A stretch of DNA of 10,606 nt, taken from positions 1-10,606 of the forward strand of contig NW_003314592.1 in the NCBI RefSeq assembly GCF_000143415.4. Direction: 5' to 3'. Under the pieces are notes generated by a model that was not told the DNA's origin, did no database searches, and saw only the letters and a list, made by a program, of their open reading frames with translations. The translations under genes and the position numbers were made by a program. The DNA is from Selaginella moellendorffii. Taxonomy: Eukaryota > Plantae > Lycopodiophyta. Positions 1-10,606 of the stretch are shown one piece after another; the stretch's first letter is position 1; every line of letters starts with the position of its first letter.

Positions 1-1012
1 GATCTATGTAACTATTTATAGTGATGTCAAGTATTTCAGCAATACATTTCCGGTGAAGAACAATACGTGGAATACATTCATCATCTGCTGTAGGCATAAT
101 CTCCATCTTTTTATCTGCAAGTATCTCCCAAGTTGCAGGAAAAGGCGTGTAGAGCTCACTAGCAGAACGAAGACCACATGTTCCAGAAAATATATAAATG
201 GCCCCTTGGATAACTTTTTCTGACAATGCACGTGCAGTTTCACCATAGCTGACTATACGAATCTCACTGCTTGCAGAATCAGCCACATAAAAATTAAAGA
301 CCCAACCTGTGCGTTTTGTAGTGAATTGTCTAAGAGTGTCCTTGTGAGTGACTCTCGCCTTAAATGACCATTTATATGAACGGTTTGTAAGGCTTGCAAT
401 TGCAGTTTGAGCAATTAATGGCCGCTTTGACTCATTCTCCTACATTTACAATAACAATTTTTTTAAAAAAAGAAAGAAAATTTGTGAAATTGGTTCCAAA
501 GAAAAAAGACTTACACTTGATACACCACTATGACGCTTAGATGCCTGCACCATTTGTTTTTAACAATGAAAGGAAAAATTCAATGAAAAGATTTGCTGAA
601 GTTGTTTTTGACATTTTACTCACTTTGCTTGATTCGGGTTGAATATTGTAAGTTGGAATTGGACTCCAGATATTGTTATGAAGATACATTACATCCAAAA
701 CAATTAAAGTCCTGTAGAAAAGTAAAACCATAGAATTGAAAATCACTATATAACCACATGCATACTCTTTTCCATTGTTTGCATAAAATGCGTAGTCTGT
801 GAACTTCAGAACGTGTTTGGTCGTATGATTTCCATTCTCATGGCTTGCGTAATATGAGATGAAACTACAGCTTCGATGTTGTCTATGCCATCAGTAACTA
901 TGATGCGCCCATATGATTTGGTTTCCGGCAGAAGAATGTCGGTGATGCGCAGCACAAATTCGTCTTTTGAATTCTCCCTGACAAGCCTCACTCCATGTGG
1001 TGTGCACGCCAT
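1..1012 (-). pseudogene. RPA1: RPA70/RPA1-like ssDNA-binding protein (N-terminal OB fold + DBD-A), spliced, 1-bp frameshift in exon 1, continues beyond the left edge
   Basis: Exons 1012-766, 711-624, 544-515 and 439-<1, with GT-AG introns 765-712 (54 nt), 623-545 (79 nt) and 514-440 (75 nt) in consistent phase. Exons 1-2 read ACTPHGV..FVLRITDILL..YGRIIVTDGIDNIEAVVSS..IRPNT/LKFTDYAFYANNGKETLIVLDV, which resembles the RPA70 N-terminal OB fold. Exon 4 is stop-free and reads IASLTNRSYKWSFKARVTHKDTLRQF..GWVFNFYVADSASSEIRIVSYG..VIQGAIYIFS..WEI..DDECIPR..IAEI..NSYID, matching RPA70 DBD-A (WTIKARVT.K..LR, VF.F.L.D..GEIR, DD..IP). Exon 1 is 247 nt where 248 is needed, implying one base lost near 810 (acg tt ctg aag). 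The symbol denotes family membership, not orthology. Confidence 0.9.
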
Positions 1013-1159
1013 GGTTACAAACCCTAGAATATGAATACACTTTTTAAATTATAACTTCCAAAACATACAAATATTGGAAGATAAAATGGCTAATGGAATT
1101 CTCAGTAAATGAACCCCGATATCAAAGTGTTCCATAACATGTCCCCTACTTCAATCGCT

Positions 1160-1824
1160 CTAAAAAGTGTAGTGCCAAGGACTTGGAGGTAACATATAAA
1201 TAGAAAACGTATCAGCATTTGGAATTTGGAATTGGTGGTTGCCAACCCTGCCAAAACTAATGGGTTGATCCTGGTGTAAGCTGTCGAGGCAAACGTATTT
1301 CATGCCCTGCTGAGCCTTGAGTCTGGCCTGCTCATCGGGCGAAAGGCTGTCCCATTCGGGATTCCACTCACACACTGTGCATGGAGCACAGTGCATGAAA
1401 GAGTGGGAAGAGGCTAGCTGCCTATTTTTCTTTCTATGCACTTCCTTTATGGTTAATTTTTTAGTAGGTGGTATCTGTAGTTATATATATTTGAATGTGA
1501 GGAGATCTTCGTCCCTGTCCCCCGCACTGCCCTTCTCACCTGGCCGCTACGTACATGTGACTGATCCCAAACTGGTGGAGAATTCTCATGGCCTTGAGAT
1601 CTTCTCACTGGTGATGCTGCTGCTGCTACTGCTGTGATTCCGACTCCAAATCTCCTCTCTCTCTCCAGCCACTGCTGTCGTTGATCAGATAGCGATATGT
1701 AGTGGTGCTTAAATTTTGTATCCTGGATCCACATGAGAATGACGTGATAGCAAAGAACAAGACTTACCTGTAGCATTAAGTCGACTCTACCATTGGGACT
1801 TCTAGATAGCCTTTCTGTCACCAT
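1160..1824 (-). CDS. Orphan 3-exon protein (~184 aa) with a low-complexity middle and a C-terminal H-C-x2-C-x2-C motif region
   Basis: Exons 1824-1768, 1722-1540 and 1474-1160. Introns are 1767-1723 (CAG|GTAAGT..CCAG, 45 nt) and 1539-1475 (CAG|GTGAGA..ACAG, 65 nt), both phase 0, joining ORF-track ORFs 1453..1824 and 1160..1441 with no stop. The C-terminus reads SHSFMHCAPCTVCEWNPEWDSLSPDEQARLKAQQGMKYVCLDSLH. No family recognised. Confidence 0.55.
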
Positions 1825-2592
1825 ACTGCTGTGACAAAACCATACCCCAAACGAAGAACTTCCTCTAGCTTTGATAGCAAAACTTAAAAAGCACTATGTT
1901 TACCTGTATCCCACTTGAAGGTTGTTGTTGTGTTTAACGTTACATATGACAGATGTTGTTCCTATTTATACAACTCAAGCTAGCTCAGGAAGATTTGTGA
2001 AGCACAAAGGCAAAACGTGAAAACTTTCAGAAGCATGTGTATTCTCTCTGTTGCTTTTGTTTATCATTCCACTCGTTGATTTCTACAGGAACACATGGTT
2101 AGAGGAAGCTTCTGCTGAGATCGAAGCTGCTGTTAGGAATAGTTTGGACAAGGTTTAACTCAACTTATTTTCATGCATGCTAAGTGGCTCCAATGTGGAA
2201 GTGTAGGCACAGGCCTGTGAACTTAAATCCATTCATTTAATCCAGCTCCGAAATGTACTATCTATCCCAACGGAGCTGGATGTCACTCTATGCCCATATT
2301 CATCATTGACATAGTGACAGAAATCATTCACTTGAATTGCTTTTGTTCTTTTTCAAAACAAACTAAGGATTTGAGATTTTTTTGGACAGAGTCTAAAACA
2401 AGCATGTGGTCATGTTAGAGGATGTATGAGATCTTGCAGCAGAACTGAACTTTGAAGTATTGATGGTAGGTACATGCTGTATAGGCTCAAGAGCATTCAC
2501 AAGTTGCCTATCCTCATAGCGCTCTTCAGAAGTACAACAAGGATCACAGAAAGTTAATGCATGTTCTAGATGAACACCTCACGTCTTATTAA
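1769..2592 (+). pseudogene. Spliced orphan gene remnant, predicted alpha-helical, with three in-frame TGA codons; 5' end undefined
   Basis: Phase-consistent exons ~1769-1897, 1953-2032 (or -2038), 2089-2152, 2207-2254, 2390-2469 and 2520-2592, with introns of 55, 56/50, 54, 135 and 50 nt. Translation: ..PLGLLDSLSVTILL*QNHTPNEELPLALIAKLKKHY|MLFLFIQLKLAQEDL*STKAKRENFQK|NTWLEEASAEIEAAVRNSLDK|AQACELKSIHLIQLRN|SLKQACGHVRGCMRSCSRTEL*SIDGS|ALQKYNKDHRKLMHVLDEHLTSY. TGA codons are at 1832, 1998 and 2453. Confidence 0.45.
1963..1970 (-). promoter_or_regulatory. Candidate TATA box (TATAAATA) for the minus-strand orphan at 1824
   Basis: TATAAATA on the minus strand is followed about 30 nt later by a CAA-rich stretch, then a CAG|GTAAAC donor near 1903 and a CAGCAG acceptor (1831-1826) just before ATG 1824. 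It also lies within a putative plus-strand exon, so it may be coincidental. Confidence 0.35.
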
Positions 2593-2830
2593 GACAGATA
2601 ATTCATTAAAGTTTAGTTCTAAAGTCTTTTAATATCTTCCTTCTAGAGAAAACATTAATATCAATATAGATAGTCAAAAAAAGAAACTCTGAAACGCTTT
2701 GCTCTTGAAGTATGAGTGGTGTTAATACTTTCCAACCACAGGTAGCAATTAGGCACATCTAGAGTAAATTTCTTTGTCATAACGATATATGTCATTCCAT
2801 CCCATATGTATTGCTACAAAAAGGAAGTTG

Positions 2831-4042
2831 TTAATCTCTCAACTCTAAAACATATAAGCATACCTCTTGGAGACCACACCATAGGTTATATTGATGAATT
2901 AATATGTCTTGGTCTTCATTTTCAGTTGCAGATACAAAAAGCTTGACACCATCAAACTGTTTCATGAATTGAAGTTCCACACACACAAATGTTATATATG
3001 TAAAGCATGGATCTCCACTAAAGGATGATAATTCTGGGACTGGCATGCAACCATGCTAAGAAAACATAGAAACAAAAGATAATCAGTAACAAAAAAGGAT
3101 CTCTTTAACTAATCACCATACATGATAATTTTTGAAATGTCTCAGATGACCCTGTAAAATTGCTTTAATAGGGTCTTTAACAAAACAAAATGATGCTTCA
3201 TGTAGGTTCATTAATAGATTTTTCAACCACCATATCAGAGACATATGTCCTCTAACTATTGGAGGAGTGCAAGACATAACTTCACCATTGTTCCAAAAAT
3301 TCTTGGAGCTAATAAATATATCTCCTGAAAAAATATTGATAAAATATTTCTTATTATTTAATGAACTTCCGAATGGAATCATTCCTAATTCAAAACCAAT
3401 GTGCATAGCACGCAACTTTAAAGTTAAGGAACAAATCTCCTGAATATGCAGCATTTTTTAACACATAAACGTGTTGTTTGTCCAGTAACACCCAATCAAA
3501 CCTCCATATTCCTGATTTACAAAACCCTCAAAAATAGAACGACTACACTGTCCATTCATTGATAGTAAGAAACACCTCAGTGACTGTGGAAGTGGCACGT
3601 GTAACTCGCTTTCAGCTTCGTCTAATATTTGGTTGGGCATTCTTCCCAATATTGTTGGGAAAAATTCATGTGCCTTGAGATGTATATAGGATTTCAATTG
3701 AGTGACAATATTCCTGGTTTGCACAACGATGTCAAAGTTGTATCTTTTGAATGTCATATACCAGCTCTTGTAAGCCTCCTGCATTGAAAAAAAAATTAAA
3801 TATTAAAACAGAATATGAACAAAATAAACCTTATATGTTCCAACACGTTGGCCTTCAAAGGTTATTGGTGAGCATAATGCAAAATCCCATTGACAATGCT
3901 TCTTCCAGTTTGTTTCCATGTTACACCACCTGTAGAATTGTTTAGATAGGCAAGAAAAAATAGCGTTGTTGTAGCCTCTGGTAGTGGCAATCCTATACAC
4001 TAGCTCAAATGGAAGAAAAGGAAGGCGACCACAGTAATCCAT
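2831..4042 (-). pseudogene. SKIP16/FBXO3-like F-box protein (F-box + SMI1/KNR4-like domain + eroded ApaG start), in-frame TAA at 3460-3458
   Basis: Exons 4042-3830, 3778-3122 and 3055-2831, with introns 3829-3779 (51 nt) and 3121-3056 (66 nt, less certain). Exon 1 has an F-box-like LPFELVYRI..FSCLSKQF..ETNWKKHCQWDFALCSP..G..TYK. Exon 2 reads EAYKSW..F..Y..LDEAESELHVPLPQSLRCFLLSMNGQ..GLIGCY..KYFINIFSGDIFISSKNFWNNGEVMSCTP..SLIWWL, paralleling plant SKIP16 (E..L.VKLP..R.LY...DGQ, GLIGGY, FFLNC.NGQLYVG..NL..DGEM.PCVP, MLLWL). Exon 3 PVPELS..CFTY resembles the start of ApaG (FVPELS..FAY). ORF-track ORFs 3458..3784 and 3113..3454 are the same frame separated by one TAA. Confidence 0.85.
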
Positions 4043-4071
4043 AACTGAAATTAGGTTTAGGTTAAAAAAAT

Positions 4072-4444
4072 ATGGAAACAGCATTCGTTTTACAACCCTT
4101 CCACTTTTGCCAGAATATGTGGCTACAGGTACGAACACAAACTACTCATCATGTTAATTGTGAATGAATTTTCCTTTATATAGCTTTCTCCTGATTGGGT
4201 TCAACGATCAATGGAGTGTTCTTTTTCATGCGAAAATGGTGATAAAGTCTTTTTTGTGTTTCAAGAAAACAGTGAATTCATGTTTGAACTTCTAAACAAT
4301 GACTATAGAAGTTTCAAATTCAAGACTGATACAAAATGGCAAGAATTCCTGTGCAAACAGCAAGCAAAAGTAGGAGACATTTGTAAGATAAAATGTGAAG
4401 ATGGACAGATTGTTGCAAAGATACATAAAATTAGACAATGCTAG
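4072..4444 (+). CDS. Stand-alone B3-like DNA-binding domain protein (105 aa, 2 exons, intact)
   Basis: Exon 1 is 4072-4128 (METAFVLQPFHFCQNMWLQ), then a phase-0 intron 4129-4183 (CAG|GTACGA..ATAG, 55 nt), then exon 2 at 4184-4444 (LSPDWVQRSME..KVFFVFQENSEFMFEL..KWQEFLCKQQAKVGDICKIKCEDGQIVAKIHK). WQEFLCKQQAKVGDIC matches the B3 signature W..F.....L..GD.C.F. The N-terminal L.P.H....WL.L fits REM-type B3. Confidence 0.7.
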
Positions 4445-4574
4445 AAGAAGCTTACATACTAGCTTTATTCTTTCTCTATGTAGGGCTAAACAGTGCTTTT
4501 TGCAAATTCCATAACAAAAAAAACAAAAAATAGAAAAAAAAAACTTCATTATCTGGCTCTATACTACAGAAGAA

Positions 4575-5257
4575 AGAAGATACTTGCTCCACTGTCGGTT
4601 GCTACCATGTCTTCCTCACTTCATCGTCGTCATCATGTCAGCTGCTGCTTGATCGCCAGTAGTTGTCGTGCAAATTCTCTCCTTCTCAAGCTCCCGATGC
4701 ACCGCCACCACTAGCAGGAGCACTGTTGGTGTTGGATCCTATCAGAACAAACACGGAAAAAAGTTAGAATGAGTGAATGAAGAACAAACAAACAACTCAT
4801 GAAATTTCAAATACATACCTGGAGGACTTTTCCGGTTACTATTGTCACCAGCAGCAGCACTGCCTTGATCAGAAGACAGGTTTGGGGGTGGTCTTCCTGC
4901 TGATAGTGTTGCCCTCGTCCTCACTACGACCACTGCCGTACTCATTGGCGTTGTCATCAGCTCCCCGATGTCGTGCTGCTAATCGTGTTAAGCGTGCTCT
5001 CAAAGAGGCCATCTCGTTTGGACAGACAGCATCTTGCGCCGCCTGAAGCAATGCCATGCCTTCTTGCGAGACAGGATTACAGCCAGAGCCAAGCCCTAGG
5101 AGATGGTGACGCACATGAGTAGCTGTACCTGTGCATTAGATGCCACAGATATTGCATCTCCCCAGGGCACTAACCTGTCTGACAGAATGGTTCATGCAGA
5201 ATGCTTGCTTGAGTCTCTCCTCGCCAAGCTCACGAATAATAGATATGGAGACCTTAA
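4575..5257 (-). pseudogene. Decayed BED-type zinc-finger gene fragment with a low-complexity tail
   Basis: The frame of ORF 4869..5114 extends upstream through one TAA (5138-5136): KVSISIIRELGEERLKQAF..SALGRCNICGI*CTGTATHVRHHLLGLGSGCNP. C-x2-C..G.AT.V..HLLG..GC is the pattern of plant hAT-type BED fingers. Downstream there is a frameshift near 4885, a CAG|GTATGT donor near 4818, an acceptor near 4740 and a stop-containing Gly/Ser/Arg-rich exon. No hAT DDE or dimerisation domain follows. Confidence 0.55.
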
Positions 5258-5428
5258 CTGAGGTCAATTAGCCTTATAATAAAGACTCCTCAGTGGATCA
5301 CCAAGTGCTCTTCCGTGTTCTCATCGCAAGTTCCGAAGTGTAAGAACAAATGGCTACAATAAAACACCAATACATAGTTTCTGTTCTTGCATTGCACCAG
5401 AGAAAACTCCAATGTCAGATAATAAATT

Positions 5429-6953
5429 GTGAGATATTGTTTACTTGTTCTTGATTTTTATGCTGCTCGAGAAATTCAGTATTGTCAGTATGCGGTCTTG
5501 GTGAAAATCATAACAAAGAATCAAAAGGAGAGATTTGAACCAGATATTTGTTGCATTTCGAAATAATAACTTGATACCACTGCGTTTTGTCTGCCAAACG
5601 GATTTGGCCAGTTCAGGAAGCTCTGTCGCCTGATTATTTTGGTTGCAAAGGTACAACTCTTTACTGCTATACATTGTCACGCATGTTGTTCCAGGATAGC
5701 ATTTTAAGGCACTTCAGGATAATCCCAAAGATAACGTCACTGTAGCAGAACTGGGCTATCCATTTTTCTACACGAAGCTAGCACGCAGCAACTACAGTGA
5801 TATCAGAGAAGAGGCCATGGTGGACGTCGTTAATGCTGTGAGGAAGCGACCACAAGGACTTGATGGAGTTTCTCAACTTCTTAAAAGAGTTATATTTGGC
5901 TTCTGAATACCTGCTAAAAACTGGAATTACACCCTATCTGCCTATGTCCAGGACTCTGTTGATCCATGTGCGGACTTGTGTAATGTGATAGTCAAACTGT
6001 TGCACAAAATCTAAAAAATCTTTAAATACGTATTTCTATTTGGTCAGAACTTCATATTAAACCAAGAACAAAAAAGACTTAGGCCAGCATATCTACAAGG
6101 AAGCCATAGATCTCTCAAACCCAAAGCAATCTAGCATTTGTGTGTTATCCACGAAAAGACTAAGCTCCGTACAGCATCTGTTGAACATTAAGTCTTTCAT
6201 GCTCTGGGGTTCTGATGCATTTGTTTAGCATTGGTTAGACTGTAGTTCAAAGAAAGATAATCACTTAAAGTTTATCCATAGTGATGAAAAGACCTTGAAT
6301 TTAAACATATGAAACAGATATTCTCTATTATAAAAACAGTTACAACAAGACTAGCTTCAAAACATTTTCACGTGTACCTAGGTTAATAGATACTTTCTCA
6401 AGGAAATGGCAGAGAGAAGCAACGAAGCAGAAAAAATGGAGAAGTGGATGAAGGCTACAAGTGAAATAGAGAAAAGAGGAATTAAGCGCGTATGCTGTCG
6501 TGACTTCATGATAAACGACAGGTAATTTAGATTTAGATTCGAAAAGATGGTTAATGAAACCTTGTGAACGTGATAGATTCTTTCCAACTGACAGTCAAGC
6601 ACGAAAACTTGATGTGCTTGGGTGTCCACCATCAGAATACATGTATGGCTTTGCTAGCAGTGATGGGGTCTCAAGAAAGATTACAACATATATAAGCAAA
6701 GTCAAACAGTTTAAAAGAATCAACAAGAGAAAGAATGTTGCACCGGGTAAGTGTGGATGTTATACTCTTTGTTCTCTACTTTTTTTTACAAAAAAAACTA
6801 TCACATGCAGGATTGACTGTATTCACAGCACAGATTCTAAATGGCAAGAAGTATAATAAGAATCGCCTACCAAACAAAGCAGAAGTACAAAAGGTATTTG
6901 ATAGAAACACAAGAGGAATCCATCCGTATGTCTTCTCGGCATTGCATTATTGA
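5429..6953 (+). pseudogene. Long multi-exon orphan pseudogene, probably interrupted by the LTR element
   Basis: Phase-consistent introns at 5488-5543 (56 nt), 5651-5694 (44 nt), 6522-6576 (55 nt) and 6747-6810 (64 nt). Protein-like segments include YHCVLSAKRIWPVQEALSPDYFGCK, VAELGYPFFYTKLARSNYSDIREEAMVDVVNAVRKRPQGLDGVSQLLKRVIFGF, YFLKEMAERSNEAEKMEKWMKATSEIEKRGIKRVCCRDFMINDR|FFPTDSQARKLDVLGCPPSEYMYGF..NVAP|GLTVFTAQILNGKKY. In-frame stops occur at 5572, 5697, 5904 and elsewhere. Junctions at ~5980-6085 and ~6310-6381 are unresolved. Confidence 0.55.
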
Positions 6954-6960
6954 TATGGCT

Positions 6961-7066
6961 TGTTAGGCGCCAACTTTGACTACGTGGTCAACGTCGGTCA
7001 AAGGGAGGCTCAAGGGTATATTAAGGCATGTTAGGGTAAGGGACTTAACCTACCCTAGGGCTCGCA
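6961..7066 (+). repeat. Putative 5' LTR (106 bp, TG...CA)
   Basis: Starts TGTTAGG at the compositional boundary, ends CTCGCA, and is followed 1 nt later by TGG (PBS position). It has a TATA-like TATATTAA at 7017-7024. The partner LTR is not in the window, so the boundaries are unconfirmed. Confidence 0.6.
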
Positions 7067-7067
7067 G

Positions 7068-7082
7068 TGGAGCGGCGGCGCA
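7068..7082 (+). promoter_or_regulatory. Candidate primer-binding site TGGAGCGGCGGCGCA (non-canonical)
   Basis: TGG lies immediately after the putative LTR end and 31 nt before the gag ATG. It is not the tRNA-iMet type TGGTATCAGAGC. Confidence 0.4.
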
Positions 7083-7098
7083 GAGAGAATTGGTTGCG

Positions 7099-8304
7099 AT
7101 GGCCGACCAAGCTGAACGCTGGAATCCTATCATCGATGGTGGTGCCGACAATGGTGCCGACGAAGCTGCGGAGATTTGGACCATTCAAGATGTGGTTCAT
7201 GAGCTGCGAGCCCTTAATAAAAATCAGCAAGAGATGCAAGACGAGATGCATGGCATGATGGATACCATGCGTGGGTGTGTTGAGGCACTCGAGGCTGGAC
7301 GGGGTAGCGCTCCAAGTAAGCCTTCTTTGGTAGATCGACTCAAGATTCCAACCTTTTCCGGTGATGGTGGTGTGGACGAGTGTCTCGCTTGGCTAGCCAA
7401 TGTGAAGAAGTTCTTGGCTGCTAGAGGAACTCCAGATGCAGAGGCTTTAGTGGCTATTCCGATGGTTTTGCGTGATGCGGGTCTTCGATGGTGGAATTGG
7501 CTTGAGGAGTCCCGTGTTGCGGATAAGAAACCACCAGTGTCTACCATGGATGAGTTTGAGGCTGCTTTTCGTTTACGTTTTGCCCCTCATTACGACGTGG
7601 AGAATGCTCGTACAGAACTTCGCCATTTCCAGCAAGGGAAAATGACGCTCGGGGACTATATTGAGAAGCTTACTCGTTTGATTAGTCGTGTTCCAACGAA
7701 GGATCCAGATCAGAACAAGTCCTATTTCATTGATGGCCTACATAGTGAGAGTATGCGGCAACACTTGCGTCATTCTCAGCCTACAAAGAGTTTGGAGGAG
7801 CTCTTTGATGCGGCTCGTCGCCTTGACAATGACAAGCACAAGTCTCGTAAGCGTTCACGGAGTCCTTCTGCCGAGAATCGTCGTGATGATCGCCGTGGAC
7901 ACAAGGATGGGAACAAGCATCACAAGTTGAAGTCGGTGGTGACTACTTCAGATGCAAAGGGGTCCAAGAAGCAGAAGTTCTTTGTGAAGAATTATAGACA
8001 GGGTTGTCATCATTGCGGCGAACTTGGACACTACAAGGCTGATTGTCCGCAGTTGAAGAACAAGCAGCAGGACAAGAAGAATGGCCAATCATCTTCTCAC
8101 GGTAAGTCAGATACTAAAAAGTTGCAAGCTTTACAGCGTGAGGATGACGAGAACGACCATTCCGGTCGGAGGAAGCGACTTTCGATCGTTGCTTGTCAAC
8201 TCAACTGTGTGTGGAACAAGATGGAGCTCGAGGATATGCGTGAATCAGCTTTAATGCTGGAGGGCGTGTTCCGTGGAGATCCAGTGCGGATTTTTACTGG
8301 ATAG
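7099..8304 (+). CDS. gag: Retrotransposon Gag (capsid + CCHC nucleocapsid) running into the start of the protease
   Basis: ATG at 7099 (MADQAERW). Motifs include [50 protein letters not shown] and a zinc knuckle [14 protein letters not shown] at 8005-8046. The frame ends at VRIFTG* because of an extra T in the T5 run at 8291-8295. Confidence 0.93.
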
Positions 8305-10606
8305 TGGGATGCCATGGTTGGTGAAGGTGGATCCAGAGATAACGTGGAGCATTAAGCGTATCTCGCTGGAGTATGGTGGAGTTAAAGATGTGTGGTTTGG
8401 CGAGGGCATTCAACCACCAGTTGTTATGCTCTCTGCTACATCTTTGAAGCGGGCTTGTTGTAATGGAAAAGCACTTTCGAGTTACTTGCTGTTTGTTCGT
8501 GACTTGGGCGACCAAGGCACGTGTGGGGGAGACGCAGCAGTATGGGATGTACTCGACGAGTTTTCTGATGTTTTTCCATCTGAACTTCCTCATGGATTGC
8601 CTCCATTACGAGGTGTGGAGCATGGGATTACATTGGAGCCGGGGACGCGGCCAATTTACCGGTGTCCATTTCGGTTAAGTTATGCGGAGGAGCAAGAAGT
8701 TCAACGACAAGTCAAGGAGTTACTTGAGTTTGGATTTATTCAGCCAAGTAAGTCTCCATTTGGTGCTCCGGTCTTGTTTGTGAAGAAGAAAGACGGTTCA
8801 ATGCGGATGTGTATTGACTACCGTGCTTTAAACAAGAAGACAGTGAAGGACAAGATGCCGATGCCACGTGTGGATGATATCCTNNNNNNNNNNNNNNNNN
8901 NNNNNNNNNNNNNNNNNNNNNNNNNNNNNNNNNNNNNNNNNNNNNNNNNNNNNNNNNNNNNNNNNNNNNNNNNNNNNNNNNNNNNNNNNNNNNNNNNNNN
9001 NNNNNNNNNNNNNNNNNNNNNNNNNNNNNNNNNNNNNNNNNNNNNNNNNNNNNNNNNNNNNNNNNNNNNNNNNNNNNNNNNNNNNNNNNNNNNNNNNNNN
9101 NNNNNNNNNNNNNNNNNNNNNNNNNNNNNNNNNNNNNNNNNNNNNGAGCATAGGGTGCATTTGCGCAAGGTTCTTTTGTTACTTCGAGACAGCAAACTTT
9201 ATGCAAAGAAGAGCAAATGTGAATTTGCAAAGTTGGAGGTGGAATATCTAGGCCATATTGTGACATCTAAGGGTGTCAAGACGGATCCAAGGAAGGTGGC
9301 TGTGGTGGAAAACTGGCCTACACTGACTACAGTGGCCGAGTTGCGCAGTTTTCTTGGTATGGCTAGTTACTACCGACGTTTCCAGCATAAGTTTGCAGAG
9401 GTGGCTATTCCGTTGACGCGGTTGTTACGCAAGAATGTGCCATTCGAGTGGAAGACGCCACAAGAGGAGAGTTTTGTGGCGCTGAAACGATTGTTGATCG
9501 AGGCTCCAGTGCTTCGCATTGCTGATCCATCGAAACCTTACGAGGTGACATGCGATGCGAGTGGTTATGCACTGGGAGGAGTTCTCATGCAAGAGGGACA
9601 GCCTATTGCATATGAGAGTCGAACTTTGAATTCCGCGGAGCAACGCTATTCCACATATGAGCAAGAGTTACTCTCTATTGTTCATGCTTTGCGGACGTGG
9701 CGGCACTATCTTTATGGTGCAGTGTTCGTGGTGTTGACAGATCACAAACCACTTGTGTATCTTTTCACACAGAAGGAGTTGAACACTAGGCAAGCTCGTT
9801 AGATGGTCAAACTCATGGAGTTTGGGGAGTTTCCTATTGAGCATCGTCCGGGAAAATCAAATGTGGTGGCGGATGCTTTATCTCGTGTTCGTCATGTGAC
9901 GATGTTACGAACACAATTTTGTCATCATTTGAGTAAGGTGGTCAGCGAGTTTGGGCAGTTGGTTGAGCATGCTCAGGCTCAGGATGCTGAGGTGGCCTCT
10001 TTGCGAGACCAGATGGAAGCTCCTTTCTCATTGGTGGATGGGATTCTCTACTACAATGGCCATGTCTATTTGCCACGGGTGGATGCGTTAATTACTCAAG
10101 TTTTATTCCACTATCATGATCGTCCAGAGGCCGGTCATTTTGGGGGGAAGAAGACGTATGAATTGATTAAGCGCAACTTTTATTGGAGGAATATGAAGGC
10201 TGATATCCTCAAGTATTGTAAATCATGCGAGCTTTGTCAGCGGGTTAAGGTGCCACGGGAGAAGCCGGGGGGACTTTTGCAACCTTTACCTATTCCTCAG
10301 AGCCGTTGGTGTAGTATCTCTATGGACTTCATCACTTGTTTGCCACGAACACAGAGGCAAAAGGAGCAAGTATGGGTCATAGTAGATCGGTTGACGAAGT
10401 ATGTGCGGTTGTTGGCTCTTCGGAAGACTGTCACTGCCTCAGACTTGGCTGTGGTTTACTTGGAGAAGGTTTTTCCTGATTTTGGTTTGCCGGAGGACGT
10501 CATTAGTGATCGAGATTCAAAGTTCACCAGTGGATTTTGGAAAAGCTTTGCAAAGGCTATGGAAGTGACTTTGAACTCTCGAGTGGGTCATCCTCAGACG
10601 GATGGC
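8294..10606 (+). pseudogene. pol: Pol (deleted aspartic protease, RT, RNase H, integrase) with an in-frame TAG at 9800-9802
   Basis: Protease LLDSG is fused directly to MPWL. RT reads [39 protein letters not shown]. RNase H reads CDASGYALGGVL..EQELLSIV..WRHYL..TDHKPL..RQAR*(W)..HRPGKSNVVADALSR. Integrase has HHCC (H 10115, H 10136, C 10226, C 10235) and the core SMDFIT..VDRLTK..ISDRD..HPQTDG, in the same frame to the window end. Confidence 0.95.
8884..9145. other. 262-nt N run covering the RT catalytic core
   Basis: The Ns span from PRVDDIL to EHRVHL, preserve the reading frame and correspond to 87 codons plus 1 nt. Confidence 0.99.

What the first reader, a model, noticed from the sequence alone, without database searches (positions are those of the whole stretch)
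1..6960. Compact multi-gene cargo array with its own RPA70: probable interior of a large gene-rich Helitron-like element
Seen: at least seven unrelated spliced gene models lie in 7 kb on alternating strands, with spacers of 0 to ~240 bp (RPA70-like, two overlapping orphans, SKIP16-like F-box, B3, BED finger, long orphan). Most carry stops or frameshifts. Established: autonomous plant Helitrons encode divergent RPA70-like proteins beside Rep/PIF1-helicase and capture host genes. Inference: these look like largely whole, strongly diverged genes rather than recently captured exon scraps. That points to a long-resident accessory gene set (ssDNA binding, SCF-type ubiquitin adaptor, DNA-binding domains) carried by a large rolling-circle element. 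I do not recognise this combination as described.
Basis: partly seen in the sequence, partly recalled or inferred. Interest (0 to 1): 0.8.

Follow-up and report, generated by a model that had tools for sequence, protein, structure and literature searches.

The report
Dead Helitron accessory-gene module, spikemoss
This stretch of spikemoss (Selaginella moellendorffii) DNA is a broken, transposase-less copy of a gene module (RPA70-like, F-box/SUKH, small B3-like and one orphan gene) that belongs to rolling-circle transposons (Helitrons). It matters mainly as evidence that these transposons have kept such genes for a long time.

Summary
The window is a whole 10.6-kb scaffold of Selaginella moellendorffii.

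**Observation: partly confirmed.** Four gene models are real:
- an RPA70-like gene (1-1012, minus strand);
- a four-exon F-box/SUKH gene (2664-4042, minus strand);
- a small B3-like ORF (4211-4441, plus strand);
- a three-exon orphan (6406-6959, plus strand).

The 'BED finger' has no family or structure support. The 'two overlapping orphans' lie in a segment (1164-2279) that other copies lack.

**Interpretation: largely right.**
- The cassette recurs co-linearly on other scaffolds at 88%, 97% and 99% identity.
- An anciently diverged version of F-box/SUKH + B3-like + orphan (37-57% amino-acid identity, same order and orientation) lies 1.3 kb from an intact 1500-aa RepHel ORF.
- RepHel fragments abut another copy.
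- Substitution patterns show purifying selection between lineages.

**This copy is dead.** It has no RepHel. There is a premature stop in SUKH and one in the BED-like ORF. A Ty3/gypsy element cuts the orphan at 6959/6960. The RPA gene breaks inside DBD-C in the near-identical copy. No Helitron termini could be defined.

The scan already reported this Helitron gene trio on other DNA of this genome (s1-339338, s1-408380). This window is another, decayed copy. Stable accessory domains in Helitrons are published (HELIANO, PMC11417382), so this is a new variant of a known kind.

The parts
1..1012 (-). 5' part of an RPA70-like gene. The start codon is at 1012. It holds an N-terminal OB-like exon (815-1012) and DBD-A (2-439). 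The gene runs off the left end of the scaffold.
   Evidence: PDB human RPA70 DBD-A at E 6e-9. The L001 twin exon of 321 aa matches DBD-A plus DBD-B at E 9e-23 and REPA_OB_2 at 6e-18. Rep-A_N is weak at E 0.0078. In L001 the ORF breaks inside the DBD-C zinc ribbon.
1164..2279 (.). There is no evidence that these are genes.
   Evidence: The segment is absent from L002, which has an unrelated ~225 bp in its place. L003 similarity stops at 1928. There are no Pfam hits and no tblastn hit in any other locus.
2664..4042 (-). F-box/SUKH gene. Exons are about 3830-4042 (F-box-like), about 3119-3784 (SUKH, with a premature TAA at 3458-3460), 2864-3055 and 2664-2813 (beta-rich C-terminal domain). All introns are GT-AG.
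   Evidence: Alignment to gene models P0005, P0006 and P0008. Splice sites checked. SMI1_KNR4 at 26.2-28.5 bits. The stop codon reads TCA in L003 and TCG in L005. F-box support is only weak: Pfam E 0.32, and the best PDB hits are the GID2 F-box at E 0.18.
4211..4444 (+). Small B3-like ORF of 77 aa, open here. It lies head-to-head with the F-box gene, 168 bp between start codons.
   Evidence: Pfam B3 at E 0.0097 here and 6.8e-4 in the L005 homologue, both below the cut-off. It is 43% identical to the L005 copy with dN/dS about 0.22. The AF2 model has pLDDT 76 and shows a small beta-barrel with no significant B3 match.
4872..5267 (-). Lineage-specific ORF with a C-x2-C ... It is interrupted by TAA at 5136-5138.
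   Evidence: No Pfam or PDB hit in the window pieces or in the uninterrupted L002:6712-7014. It is present in L001, L002 and L003 but not in L004 or L005. The stop is shared with L001 and L003, while L002 has CAA.
6406..6959 (+). Conserved orphan gene. Exons are about 6406-6525, about 6560-6745 and about 6812-6959. Its last ~75 codons are cut off at 6959.
   Evidence: Exons 2-3 are 43-44% identical at amino-acid level to L005 7578-7948, in the same relative position and strand. Splice sites are GT-AG. The full last exon is seen in L003:6738-7172. No Pfam family and no Atlas lead.
6960..10606 (+). Ty3/gypsy retrotransposon interior (gag, RT, RNase H, integrase-like ORF) abutting the cassette. 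It contains an N gap at 8884-9145 and runs off the scaffold end.
   Evidence: Retrotrans_gag at 1.6e-14 and zf-CCHC. RT_RNaseH at 6e-35. Integrase-like ORF at 9803-10606. The breakpoint was located by comparison with L001 and L003.

Best explanation
Window 1-6959 is a non-functional, RepHel-less mosaic copy of a gene module owned by Helitron transposons of Selaginella moellendorffii.

**The module.** Its core is a head-to-head F-box/SUKH gene and small B3-like gene, followed by an orphan gene. In this lineage it is joined to an RPA70-like gene.

**How active relatives probably work (inferred).**
- RepHel (HUH nuclease plus Pif1 helicase) moves the element by rolling-circle transposition.
- The RPA70-like protein coats the displaced single strand.
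- The F-box/SUKH protein probably acts as an SCF adaptor that hands a host protein to the ubiquitin system.
- The B3-like protein and the orphan have unknown roles. I treat them as transposon accessory factors.

**State of this copy.** The module was copied to several loci and has since decayed.
- SUKH carries a premature stop.
- The BED-like ORF carries a stop.
- The RPA gene is broken in DBD-C.
- A Ty3/gypsy element cuts off the end of the orphan gene.

**Shown:** gene identities, multi-copy co-linearity, the link to RepHel in related copies, purifying selection between lineages, and the lesions.

**Inferred:** the biochemical roles, and mobilisation by RepHel in trans.
For: **Source and copies**
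- The source is S. moellendorffii, and the window is a whole scaffold.
- Co-linear copies: L001 at 99%, L003 at 97% over window 1928-6959, and L002 at 87-90% over 1-1163 plus 2280-6917, all on different scaffolds.

**Distant lineage (L004/L005)**
- It keeps F-box/SUKH, B3-like and orphan in the same order and relative strands at 37-57% amino-acid identity.
- The trio lies 1.3 kb from an intact 1500-aa ORF with Helitron_like_N at 5e-61 and PIF1 at 2e-58.
- RPA-like and MORC genes lie nearby.

**RepHel fragments near window-lineage copies**
- In L003, fragments at 60-62% amino-acid identity lie within about 0.2-1.2 kb beyond the orphan.
- A short fragment lies beside the second orphan copy in L001.

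**Selection**
- F-box/SUKH against L005: pS 0.76, pN 0.34, P 5e-15.
- Orphan against L005: pS 0.85, pN 0.34, P 3e-7.
- B3-like: dN/dS about 0.22.
- F-box/SUKH against L002: dN/dS 0.49, P 0.004.

**Restricted family**
- Two real hits among 1.84 billion representatives, and three annotated proteins among 5.8 billion, all from S. moellendorffii.

**Gene structure and literature**
- Canonical introns are retained.
- Helitrons are known to carry RPA, B3 and F-box-associated domains stably (PMC11417382).
Against: - No RepHel ORF in the window or in the 10 kb on either side in L001.
- No 5'-TC or 3' hairpin-CTRR terminus. Copy boundaries differ from pair to pair.
- RPA is oriented opposite to its orientation in the RepHel-bearing lineage, and L003 joins the same cassette to a different RPA (41% amino-acid identity).
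- The assembly holds two haplotypes. The 99% pair (window/L001) and the 97% pair (L004/L005) may therefore be alleles, which lowers the count of independent insertions.
- F-box and B3 assignments are sub-threshold.
- Tblastn-based codon alignments favour conserved stretches.
Confidence: 0.8

Rival explanations
1. This is an ordinary host gene cluster (F-box, B3-like, orphan, RPA paralogue) that was copied by segmental duplication and merely sits in Helitron-rich DNA.
For: No termini were found. Boundaries between copies are irregular. Some near-identical 'copies' may be haplotypes. A 93%-identical Kelch gene lies beside both L003 and L005, which hints at duplicated host segments.
Against: Two anciently diverged versions of the trio are each next to RepHel sequence and RPA-like genes. 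Every window-lineage copy carries different disabling lesions. No relative exists outside this species in 1.84 billion representatives.
Confidence: 0.08
2. These are recently captured host gene fragments, that is, classic Helitron or Pack-type exon capture without function for the element.
For: Helitrons capture host genes. L002 carries two copies of a phosphoglucose-isomerase fragment. The 1164-2279 segment and the BED-like ORF are lineage-specific and could be such scraps.
Against: F-box/SUKH, B3-like and orphan are whole genes with their introns. They are conserved in order and orientation across lineages whose synonymous sites are saturated, with pN about 0.34. No host parent was detectable at E 1e-3 or better.
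Confidence: 0.05
3. The cassette belongs to, or is now moved by, another kind of repeat. It could be a composite or tandem unit bounded by direct repeats, or a non-Helitron DNA transposon or LARD-like element.
For: In L002 the cassette is bracketed by 400-bp direct repeats at 92% identity, 9.55 kb apart. L001 holds a second partial copy in direct orientation. An earlier scan note mentions a head-to-tail ~7.7-kb unit (s1-419816, unchecked).
Against: No transposase other than RepHel fragments was seen in any locus. Antisense intron-containing genes argue against retrotransposition. Helitrons themselves often form tandem arrays (general knowledge).
Confidence: 0.07

Closest known systems
Plant Helitrons (HLE1) with RepHel plus an RPA70-like gene and stably carried extra domains (HELIANO survey, PMC11417382)
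   Same: An RPA70-like gene with DBD-A and DBD-B. The cassette is linked to RepHel (Helitron_like_N plus PIF1) in related copies. It has DNA-binding (B3-like) and ubiquitin-pathway (F-box) accessory genes. It is multi-copy.
   Different: The accessory set is an F-box/SUKH gene, a small B3-like gene and an orphan, conserved as a block across two old lineages of a lycophyte. This set was not found in the searched literature. This copy has no RepHel and no recognisable termini.
SKIP16 / FBXO3-type F-box proteins (F-box + SUKH/SMI1 + ApaG)
   Same: The domain order is similar: an N-terminal F-box-like motif, a SUKH (SMI1_KNR4) domain, then a beta-rich C-terminal domain. That domain is predicted, at low confidence, as an FN3-like sandwich. 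ApaG has that general fold (my own knowledge).
   Different: No ApaG/DUF525 Pfam match and no detectable sequence relative outside S. moellendorffii. F-box support is only weak. The protein is encoded by a transposon rather than a conserved host locus.
Giant Selaginella Helitron with three-gene cargo, reported earlier in this scan (s1-339338; also s1-408380)
   Same: It has the same three genes. My loci L004 and L005 appear to be that lineage, with an intact RepHel beside the trio.
   Different: The window is the other, diverged lineage. It is in a decayed copy that lacks RepHel, has an extra BED-like ORF, is joined to an RPA70-like gene, and is cut by a gypsy element.

Membership tests
Helitron (HLE1) element | RepHel ORF (HUH Rep plus PIF1-type helicase) within the element | tested here: not met
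   Tblastn with the 1500-aa RepHel of L005 gave no hit in the window. It gave only a ~55-aa fragment in L001 and tiny fragments in L002. The feature is met in related loci: L005:12641-17140 is intact, and L003 holds fragments at 60-62% identity.
Helitron (HLE1) element | 5'-TC and 3' hairpin plus CTRR termini, inserted between A and T, shared among copies | tested here: inconclusive
   Pairwise boundaries differ between copies: L001/L003 at ...CATGCATGCAAAGTG|, L002 72 bp earlier, and an L001-specific break inside RPA. None shows CTRR. Too few copies were reachable.
Helitron (HLE1) element | Multi-copy, co-linear occurrence at unrelated loci | tested here: met
   L002 at 87-90%, L003 at 97% and L001 at 99%, on different scaffolds and with different flanks. 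Some pairs may be haplotypes.
RPA70 / RPA1 family | Tandem OB folds DBD-A and DBD-B | tested here: met
   Human RPA70 residues 186-417 at E 6e-22 to 9e-23. REPA_OB_2 at 6e-18. Identity to human DBD-A is about 29%, counted from the alignment.
RPA70 / RPA1 family | C-terminal DBD-C with a zinc ribbon | tested here: not met
   In L001, the 99% twin that extends the window, the ORF ends just after '...FCYASCKQ'. L002 continues with the second half of the ribbon and DBD-C, but it carries frameshifts.
RPA70 / RPA1 family | Placement relative to host RPA1 orthologues (Helitron clade or host clade) | not tested
It is only known that other Helitron-linked RPA genes here are 36-41% identical to it.
SKIP16/FBXO3-type F-box protein | F-box domain | tested here: inconclusive
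   Pfam F-box at E 0.32. A profile of five copies has the F-box of GID2 as best PDB hits at E 0.18-0.24, aligned over the F-box. The LPxE...I...C.SK.F...W pattern is visible in alignment A6.
SKIP16/FBXO3-type F-box protein | SUKH (SMI1_KNR4) domain | tested here: met
   PF09346 scores 26.2 bits on the window exon and 28.5 bits on L003:10118-10804, against a cut-off of 25.4.
SKIP16/FBXO3-type F-box protein | C-terminal ApaG (DUF525) domain | tested here: inconclusive
   No Pfam hit on P0005, P0006 or P0008. In the AF2 model (mean pLDDT 44, C-terminal part 60-70), residues 243-358 form a beta sandwich that matches generic FN3/Ig folds at Z 7-8.
B3 DNA-binding domain | Match to the B3 profile and the B3 pseudo-barrel fold | tested here: inconclusive
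   Pfam scores 16.3 and 20.0 bits against a cut-off of 30.1, covering profile positions about 20-98. The PDB profile search finds LEC2 B3 at only E 0.59. In the fold search B3 entries rank 30 or lower by Foldseek, and the best VIA Z is 4.6 to OB or cold-shock barrels.
BED zinc finger | Match to zf-BED (C-x2-C ... H-x3-5-H with flanking aromatic residues) | tested here: not met
   No Pfam family at E up to 1 and no PDB relative, for the window pieces or for the uninterrupted L002:6712-7014. Only the Cys/His spacing resembles BED.
Ty3/gypsy LTR retrotransposon (6960-10606) | gag with zinc knuckle, RT, RNase H and integrase in that order; LTRs | tested here: met
   Retrotrans_gag at 1.6e-14, zf-CCHC, and RT_RNaseH at 6e-35. 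Integrase-like ORF at 9803-10606. No LTR lies within the scaffold, so the LTR feature itself was not seen.

The most novel reading that the evidence does not exclude
Selaginella Helitrons maintain their own SCF substrate adaptor (F-box/SUKH), together with a small B3-like DNA binder and an orphan protein, as a co-inherited counter-defence or host-manipulation module. For example, it could send a host silencing or repair factor for degradation, much as some plant viruses use F-box proteins. This window would be a fossil of a second lineage, showing that the module is old.
Probability: 0.25. Interest if true: 0.75.

Novelty: new variant of a known kind. Interest (0 to 1): 0.45.

Why it matters
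Helitrons are usually seen as transposase (plus or minus RPA) surrounded by captured junk. Here an F-box/SUKH gene, a B3-like gene and an orphan have stayed together, with their introns, under purifying selection across two old Helitron lineages. That suggests real accessory functions, possibly manipulation of host ubiquitination or chromatin. Testing this only needs expression data and interaction assays in intact copies. The window itself is a dead copy. Its value is comparative: it gives a second lineage, dated lesions and evidence of recombination with different RPA genes.

Tried and rejected
- **Word-index search, SUKH exon alone.** No candidates, because of the tool's length window. This is not evidence of absence.
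- **Representative search.** One of its three hits (P0007) is a tandem-repeat artefact.
- **AF2 of the F-box/SUKH protein P0008.** Too poor to use (mean pLDDT 44) except for the C-terminal beta domain. The fold hits are generic.
- **AF2 of the B3-like ORF.** Usable (pLDDT 76), but neither Foldseek nor VIA put B3 domains at the top.
- **PDB profile searches.** Those for F-box, B3-like, F-box/SUKH and BED-like gave nothing significant.
- **Atlas look-alike search for the orphan.** Only sub-0.9 bacterial leads, which I rejected.
- **Termini.** Three boundary alignments showed no shared TC or CTRR ends.
- **Host PGI intron idea.** I considered that L002's two PGI fragments were exons of a host gene split by the element. 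They are in fact duplicates of the same fragment.
- **Window 1164-2279.** I looked for a target-site duplication around it and found none.
- **Rfam, tandem repeats and internal repeats of the window.** Nothing.
- **Exact-sequence look-up of the B3-like ORF.** Not annotated anywhere.
- **Steps not done.** Spliced exons were never joined into a protein for a search. Exons were searched one by one by reference, and the database's own gene models (P0005, P0006, P0008) stood in for full-length proteins. The RPA tree was not built because no host RPA1 sequence could be fetched.

Full report
**Source**

The RPA piece at 2-439 (minus strand) finds a 100%-identical partial protein, SELMODRAFT_432457, on a contig of exactly 10,606 bases. 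It also finds 100% and 70% relatives on other Selaginella moellendorffii scaffolds. The window is therefore a whole small scaffold of that assembly. This assembly is known to contain both haplotypes (my own knowledge).

**What is in 1-6960**

Stop-to-stop ORFs, Pfam scans, PDB searches and comparison with gene models and other copies give the following.

*a. RPA70-like gene, minus strand, 1-1012.*
- DBD-A matches human RPA70 at E 6e-9, about 29% identity.
- In the 99% twin L001 the same exon is open for 321 codons. It matches DBD-A plus DBD-B at E 9e-23 and REPA_OB_2 at 6e-18.
- The N-terminal OB match is weak (Rep-A_N, E 0.0078).
- In L001 the ORF breaks right after the first Cys pair of the DBD-C zinc ribbon. 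L002 continues through DBD-C.

*b. Segment 1164-2279, the 'two overlapping orphans'.*
- Only L001 shares it. L002 has an unrelated ~225 bp there, and L003's similarity stops at 1928.
- There are no family hits.
- I do not count these ORFs as genes.

*c. F-box/SUKH gene, minus strand, 2664-4042.*
- Alignment with the database gene models P0005, P0006 and P0008 shows four exons with GT-AG introns.
- The apparent stop at 3803-3805 is intronic.
- The TAA at 3458-3460 lies inside the SUKH-coding exon. That codon reads TCA in L003 and TCG in L005, so it is a real premature stop.
- SMI1_KNR4 passes Pfam's cut-off.
- The F-box is visible as a pattern but is only weakly supported (Pfam E 0.32; GID2 F-box top in PDB at E 0.18).
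- The C-terminal ~115 residues are predicted, at low confidence, as an FN3-like beta sandwich. That fits an ApaG-like domain but does not prove one.

*d. B3-like ORF, 4211-4441, plus strand, open.*
- It lies 168 bp head-to-head from the F-box start codon.
- B3 matches are sub-threshold in both lineages.
- The fold search is inconclusive.

*e. 'BED' ORF, 4872-5267, minus strand.*
- It has a Cys/His pattern only.
- There is no Pfam or PDB support, even for L002's uninterrupted version.
- The TAA at 5136-5138 is shared with L001 and L003.
- It is absent from the distant lineage.

*f. Orphan gene, 6406-6959, plus strand.*
- It has three exons with GT-AG introns.
- Its last ~75 codons, present in L001, L002 and L003 (L003:6738-7172), are missing. 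A Ty3/gypsy interior starts at 6960.
- The upstream ORF at 5700-5903 is lineage-specific and shows dN/dS of about 0.7.

**Copies and context**

*Window-lineage copies.*
- L001 (GL377748.1) is 99% identical over 1-6959, but it is full of assembly gaps and holds a second partial copy.
- L003 (GL377802.1) is 97% identical over 1928-6959. It then continues into a different RPA-like gene, 37-41% identical at amino-acid level.
- L002 (GL377576.1) is 87-90% identical and co-linear over 1-1163 and 2280-6917. All its genes carry stops or frameshifts.

*The distant lineage.*
- A full HMMER scan of 1.84 billion representatives with the SUKH exon found only two real relatives. The word-index search found three annotated proteins. 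All are from this species.
- The distant ones (P0006 and P0008, 42-47% identity) lie in L004 and L005. These two loci are 97% alike over 21 kb.
- There, F-box/SUKH (plus strand), B3-like (minus) and orphan (minus) keep the window's order and relative strands at 37-57% amino-acid identity.
- The F-box gene lies 1.3 kb from a 1500-aa open ORF with Helitron_like_N (5e-61), PIF1 (2e-58) and Pif1_2B.
- MORC and RPA-like genes lie on the other side.

*RepHel traces near the window lineage.*
- The window has no RepHel.
- L003 has RepHel fragments, 60-62% identical to L005's, within about 0.2-1.2 kb beyond the orphan.
- L001 has a short fragment beside its second orphan copy.
- L002 has traces.

**Selection**

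I ran Nei-Gojobori counts on exon-wise codon alignments.

| Gene | Compared with | Result |
|---|---|---|
| F-box/SUKH | L005 | pS 0.76 (saturated), pN 0.34, excess of synonymous change P 5e-15 |
| Orphan | L005 | pS 0.85, pN 0.34, P 3e-7 |
| B3-like | L005 | dN/dS about 0.22, P 0.004 |
| RPA | L003's RPA | pS 0.76, pN 0.41, P 7.5e-7 |
| F-box/SUKH | L002 (88% copy) | dN/dS 0.49, P 0.004 |

- The L002 value is what one expects when part of the divergence arose in a selected master line and part arose neutrally after insertion.
- Caveat: tblastn-derived alignments favour conserved stretches.

**Ends**

- Similarity between L001 and L003 stops about 125 bp past the orphan's stop codon.
- L002 stops 72 bp earlier.
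- On the RPA side each copy breaks at a different place.
- No TC or CTRR signature or terminal hairpin was seen.
- In L002 the cassette is bracketed by two 92%-identical ~400-bp copies of a phosphoglucose-isomerase fragment, 9.55 kb apart. This could mean tandem units.
- RPA has the opposite orientation, relative to the trio, from that in L004/L005.
- The window lineage is therefore a rearranged, non-autonomous composite whose limits I could not define.

**Interpretation**

The best reading, at about 0.8, is a dead copy of a Helitron accessory-gene module.
- The identities, copy structure, RepHel linkage in relatives, selection and lesions are shown.
- The roles (ssDNA coating by RPA, SCF adaptor for F-box/SUKH, DNA binding for the B3-like protein) are inferred from family knowledge. 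F-box and B3 are themselves only weakly supported.
- The rivals are a host cluster spread by segmental duplication, fresh capture scraps, and another repeat class. Each is below 0.1.

**Comparison with what is known**

- Helitrons with RPA are textbook.
- No paper in the library links Helitrons with SKIP16-type or SUKH F-box genes, or describes this Selaginella family.
- Earlier notes of this scan on other DNA of the same genome already describe the trio beside an intact RepHel and a second lineage (s1-339338; also s1-408380). My results agree with them and were obtained independently from this window.

Exons were searched by reference one at a time, and database gene models were used as they stand.
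- No host RPA1 sequence could be fetched, so the RPA tree was not built.

Noticed in passing
window 6960-10606: Ty3/gypsy interior with long open gag (6967-8301) and pol (8255-9799, 9803-10606) frames, an N gap at 8884-9145 and one in-frame stop at 9800-9802. No LTR lies between the junction at 6960 and gag. A 124-bp piece of its start (6960-7083) also occurs in L001 at a different place (4188-4311), next to an assembly gap. The junction may therefore be an assembly artefact or a haplotype difference.
   Followed up: partly
L002 2996-3390 and 12550-12948: Two direct copies (92% identical) of a phosphoglucose-isomerase gene fragment bracket the cassette plus RPA gene, 9.55 kb apart. This could be a tandem Helitron unit or a captured fragment near an element end.
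   Followed up: partly
L003 3029-4868 and L005 20415-21345: A Kelch-repeat gene, 93% identical at DNA level, lies next to both Helitron loci. The shared trio genes of those loci are too diverged to align as DNA. The Kelch gene is either a separate young repeat or further cargo.
   Followed up: no
L004 3481-5207 (also L005 607-2544): A MORC-type ATPase gene (HATPase_c_3, Morc6_S5) lies inside the giant Helitron lineage, between its RPA-like gene and the trio. MORC-like fragments also occur in L002 3700-4277 and L001 19368-20132.
   Followed up: no
L001 17543-17908 and L004 7108-7509: A second gene with a zinc ribbon and OB-like fold ('...GWFEID...CSSC...C..C.Y.G...') recurs near both lineages, separate from the RPA70-like gene.
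   Followed up: no
L003 12102-12242 and 12473-13165: Just past the point where L003 stops matching the window, there is a lone last exon of a third, intermediate F-box/SUKH variant (42% identical to P0008). There is also an 81%-identical extra copy of the segment between the BED-like ORF and the orphan.
   Followed up: no
window 3458-3460: The premature TAA in SUKH is shared by the window and the 88% copy L002, but not by the 97% copy L003 (TCA). This needs either parallel mutation or gene conversion between copies.
   Followed up: no
L001 1903-3747 versus 13257-15095: These are 98-100% identical direct duplicates inside a locus riddled with N gaps. It could be a true tandem arrangement or an assembly duplication. 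I could not tell which.
   Followed up: no
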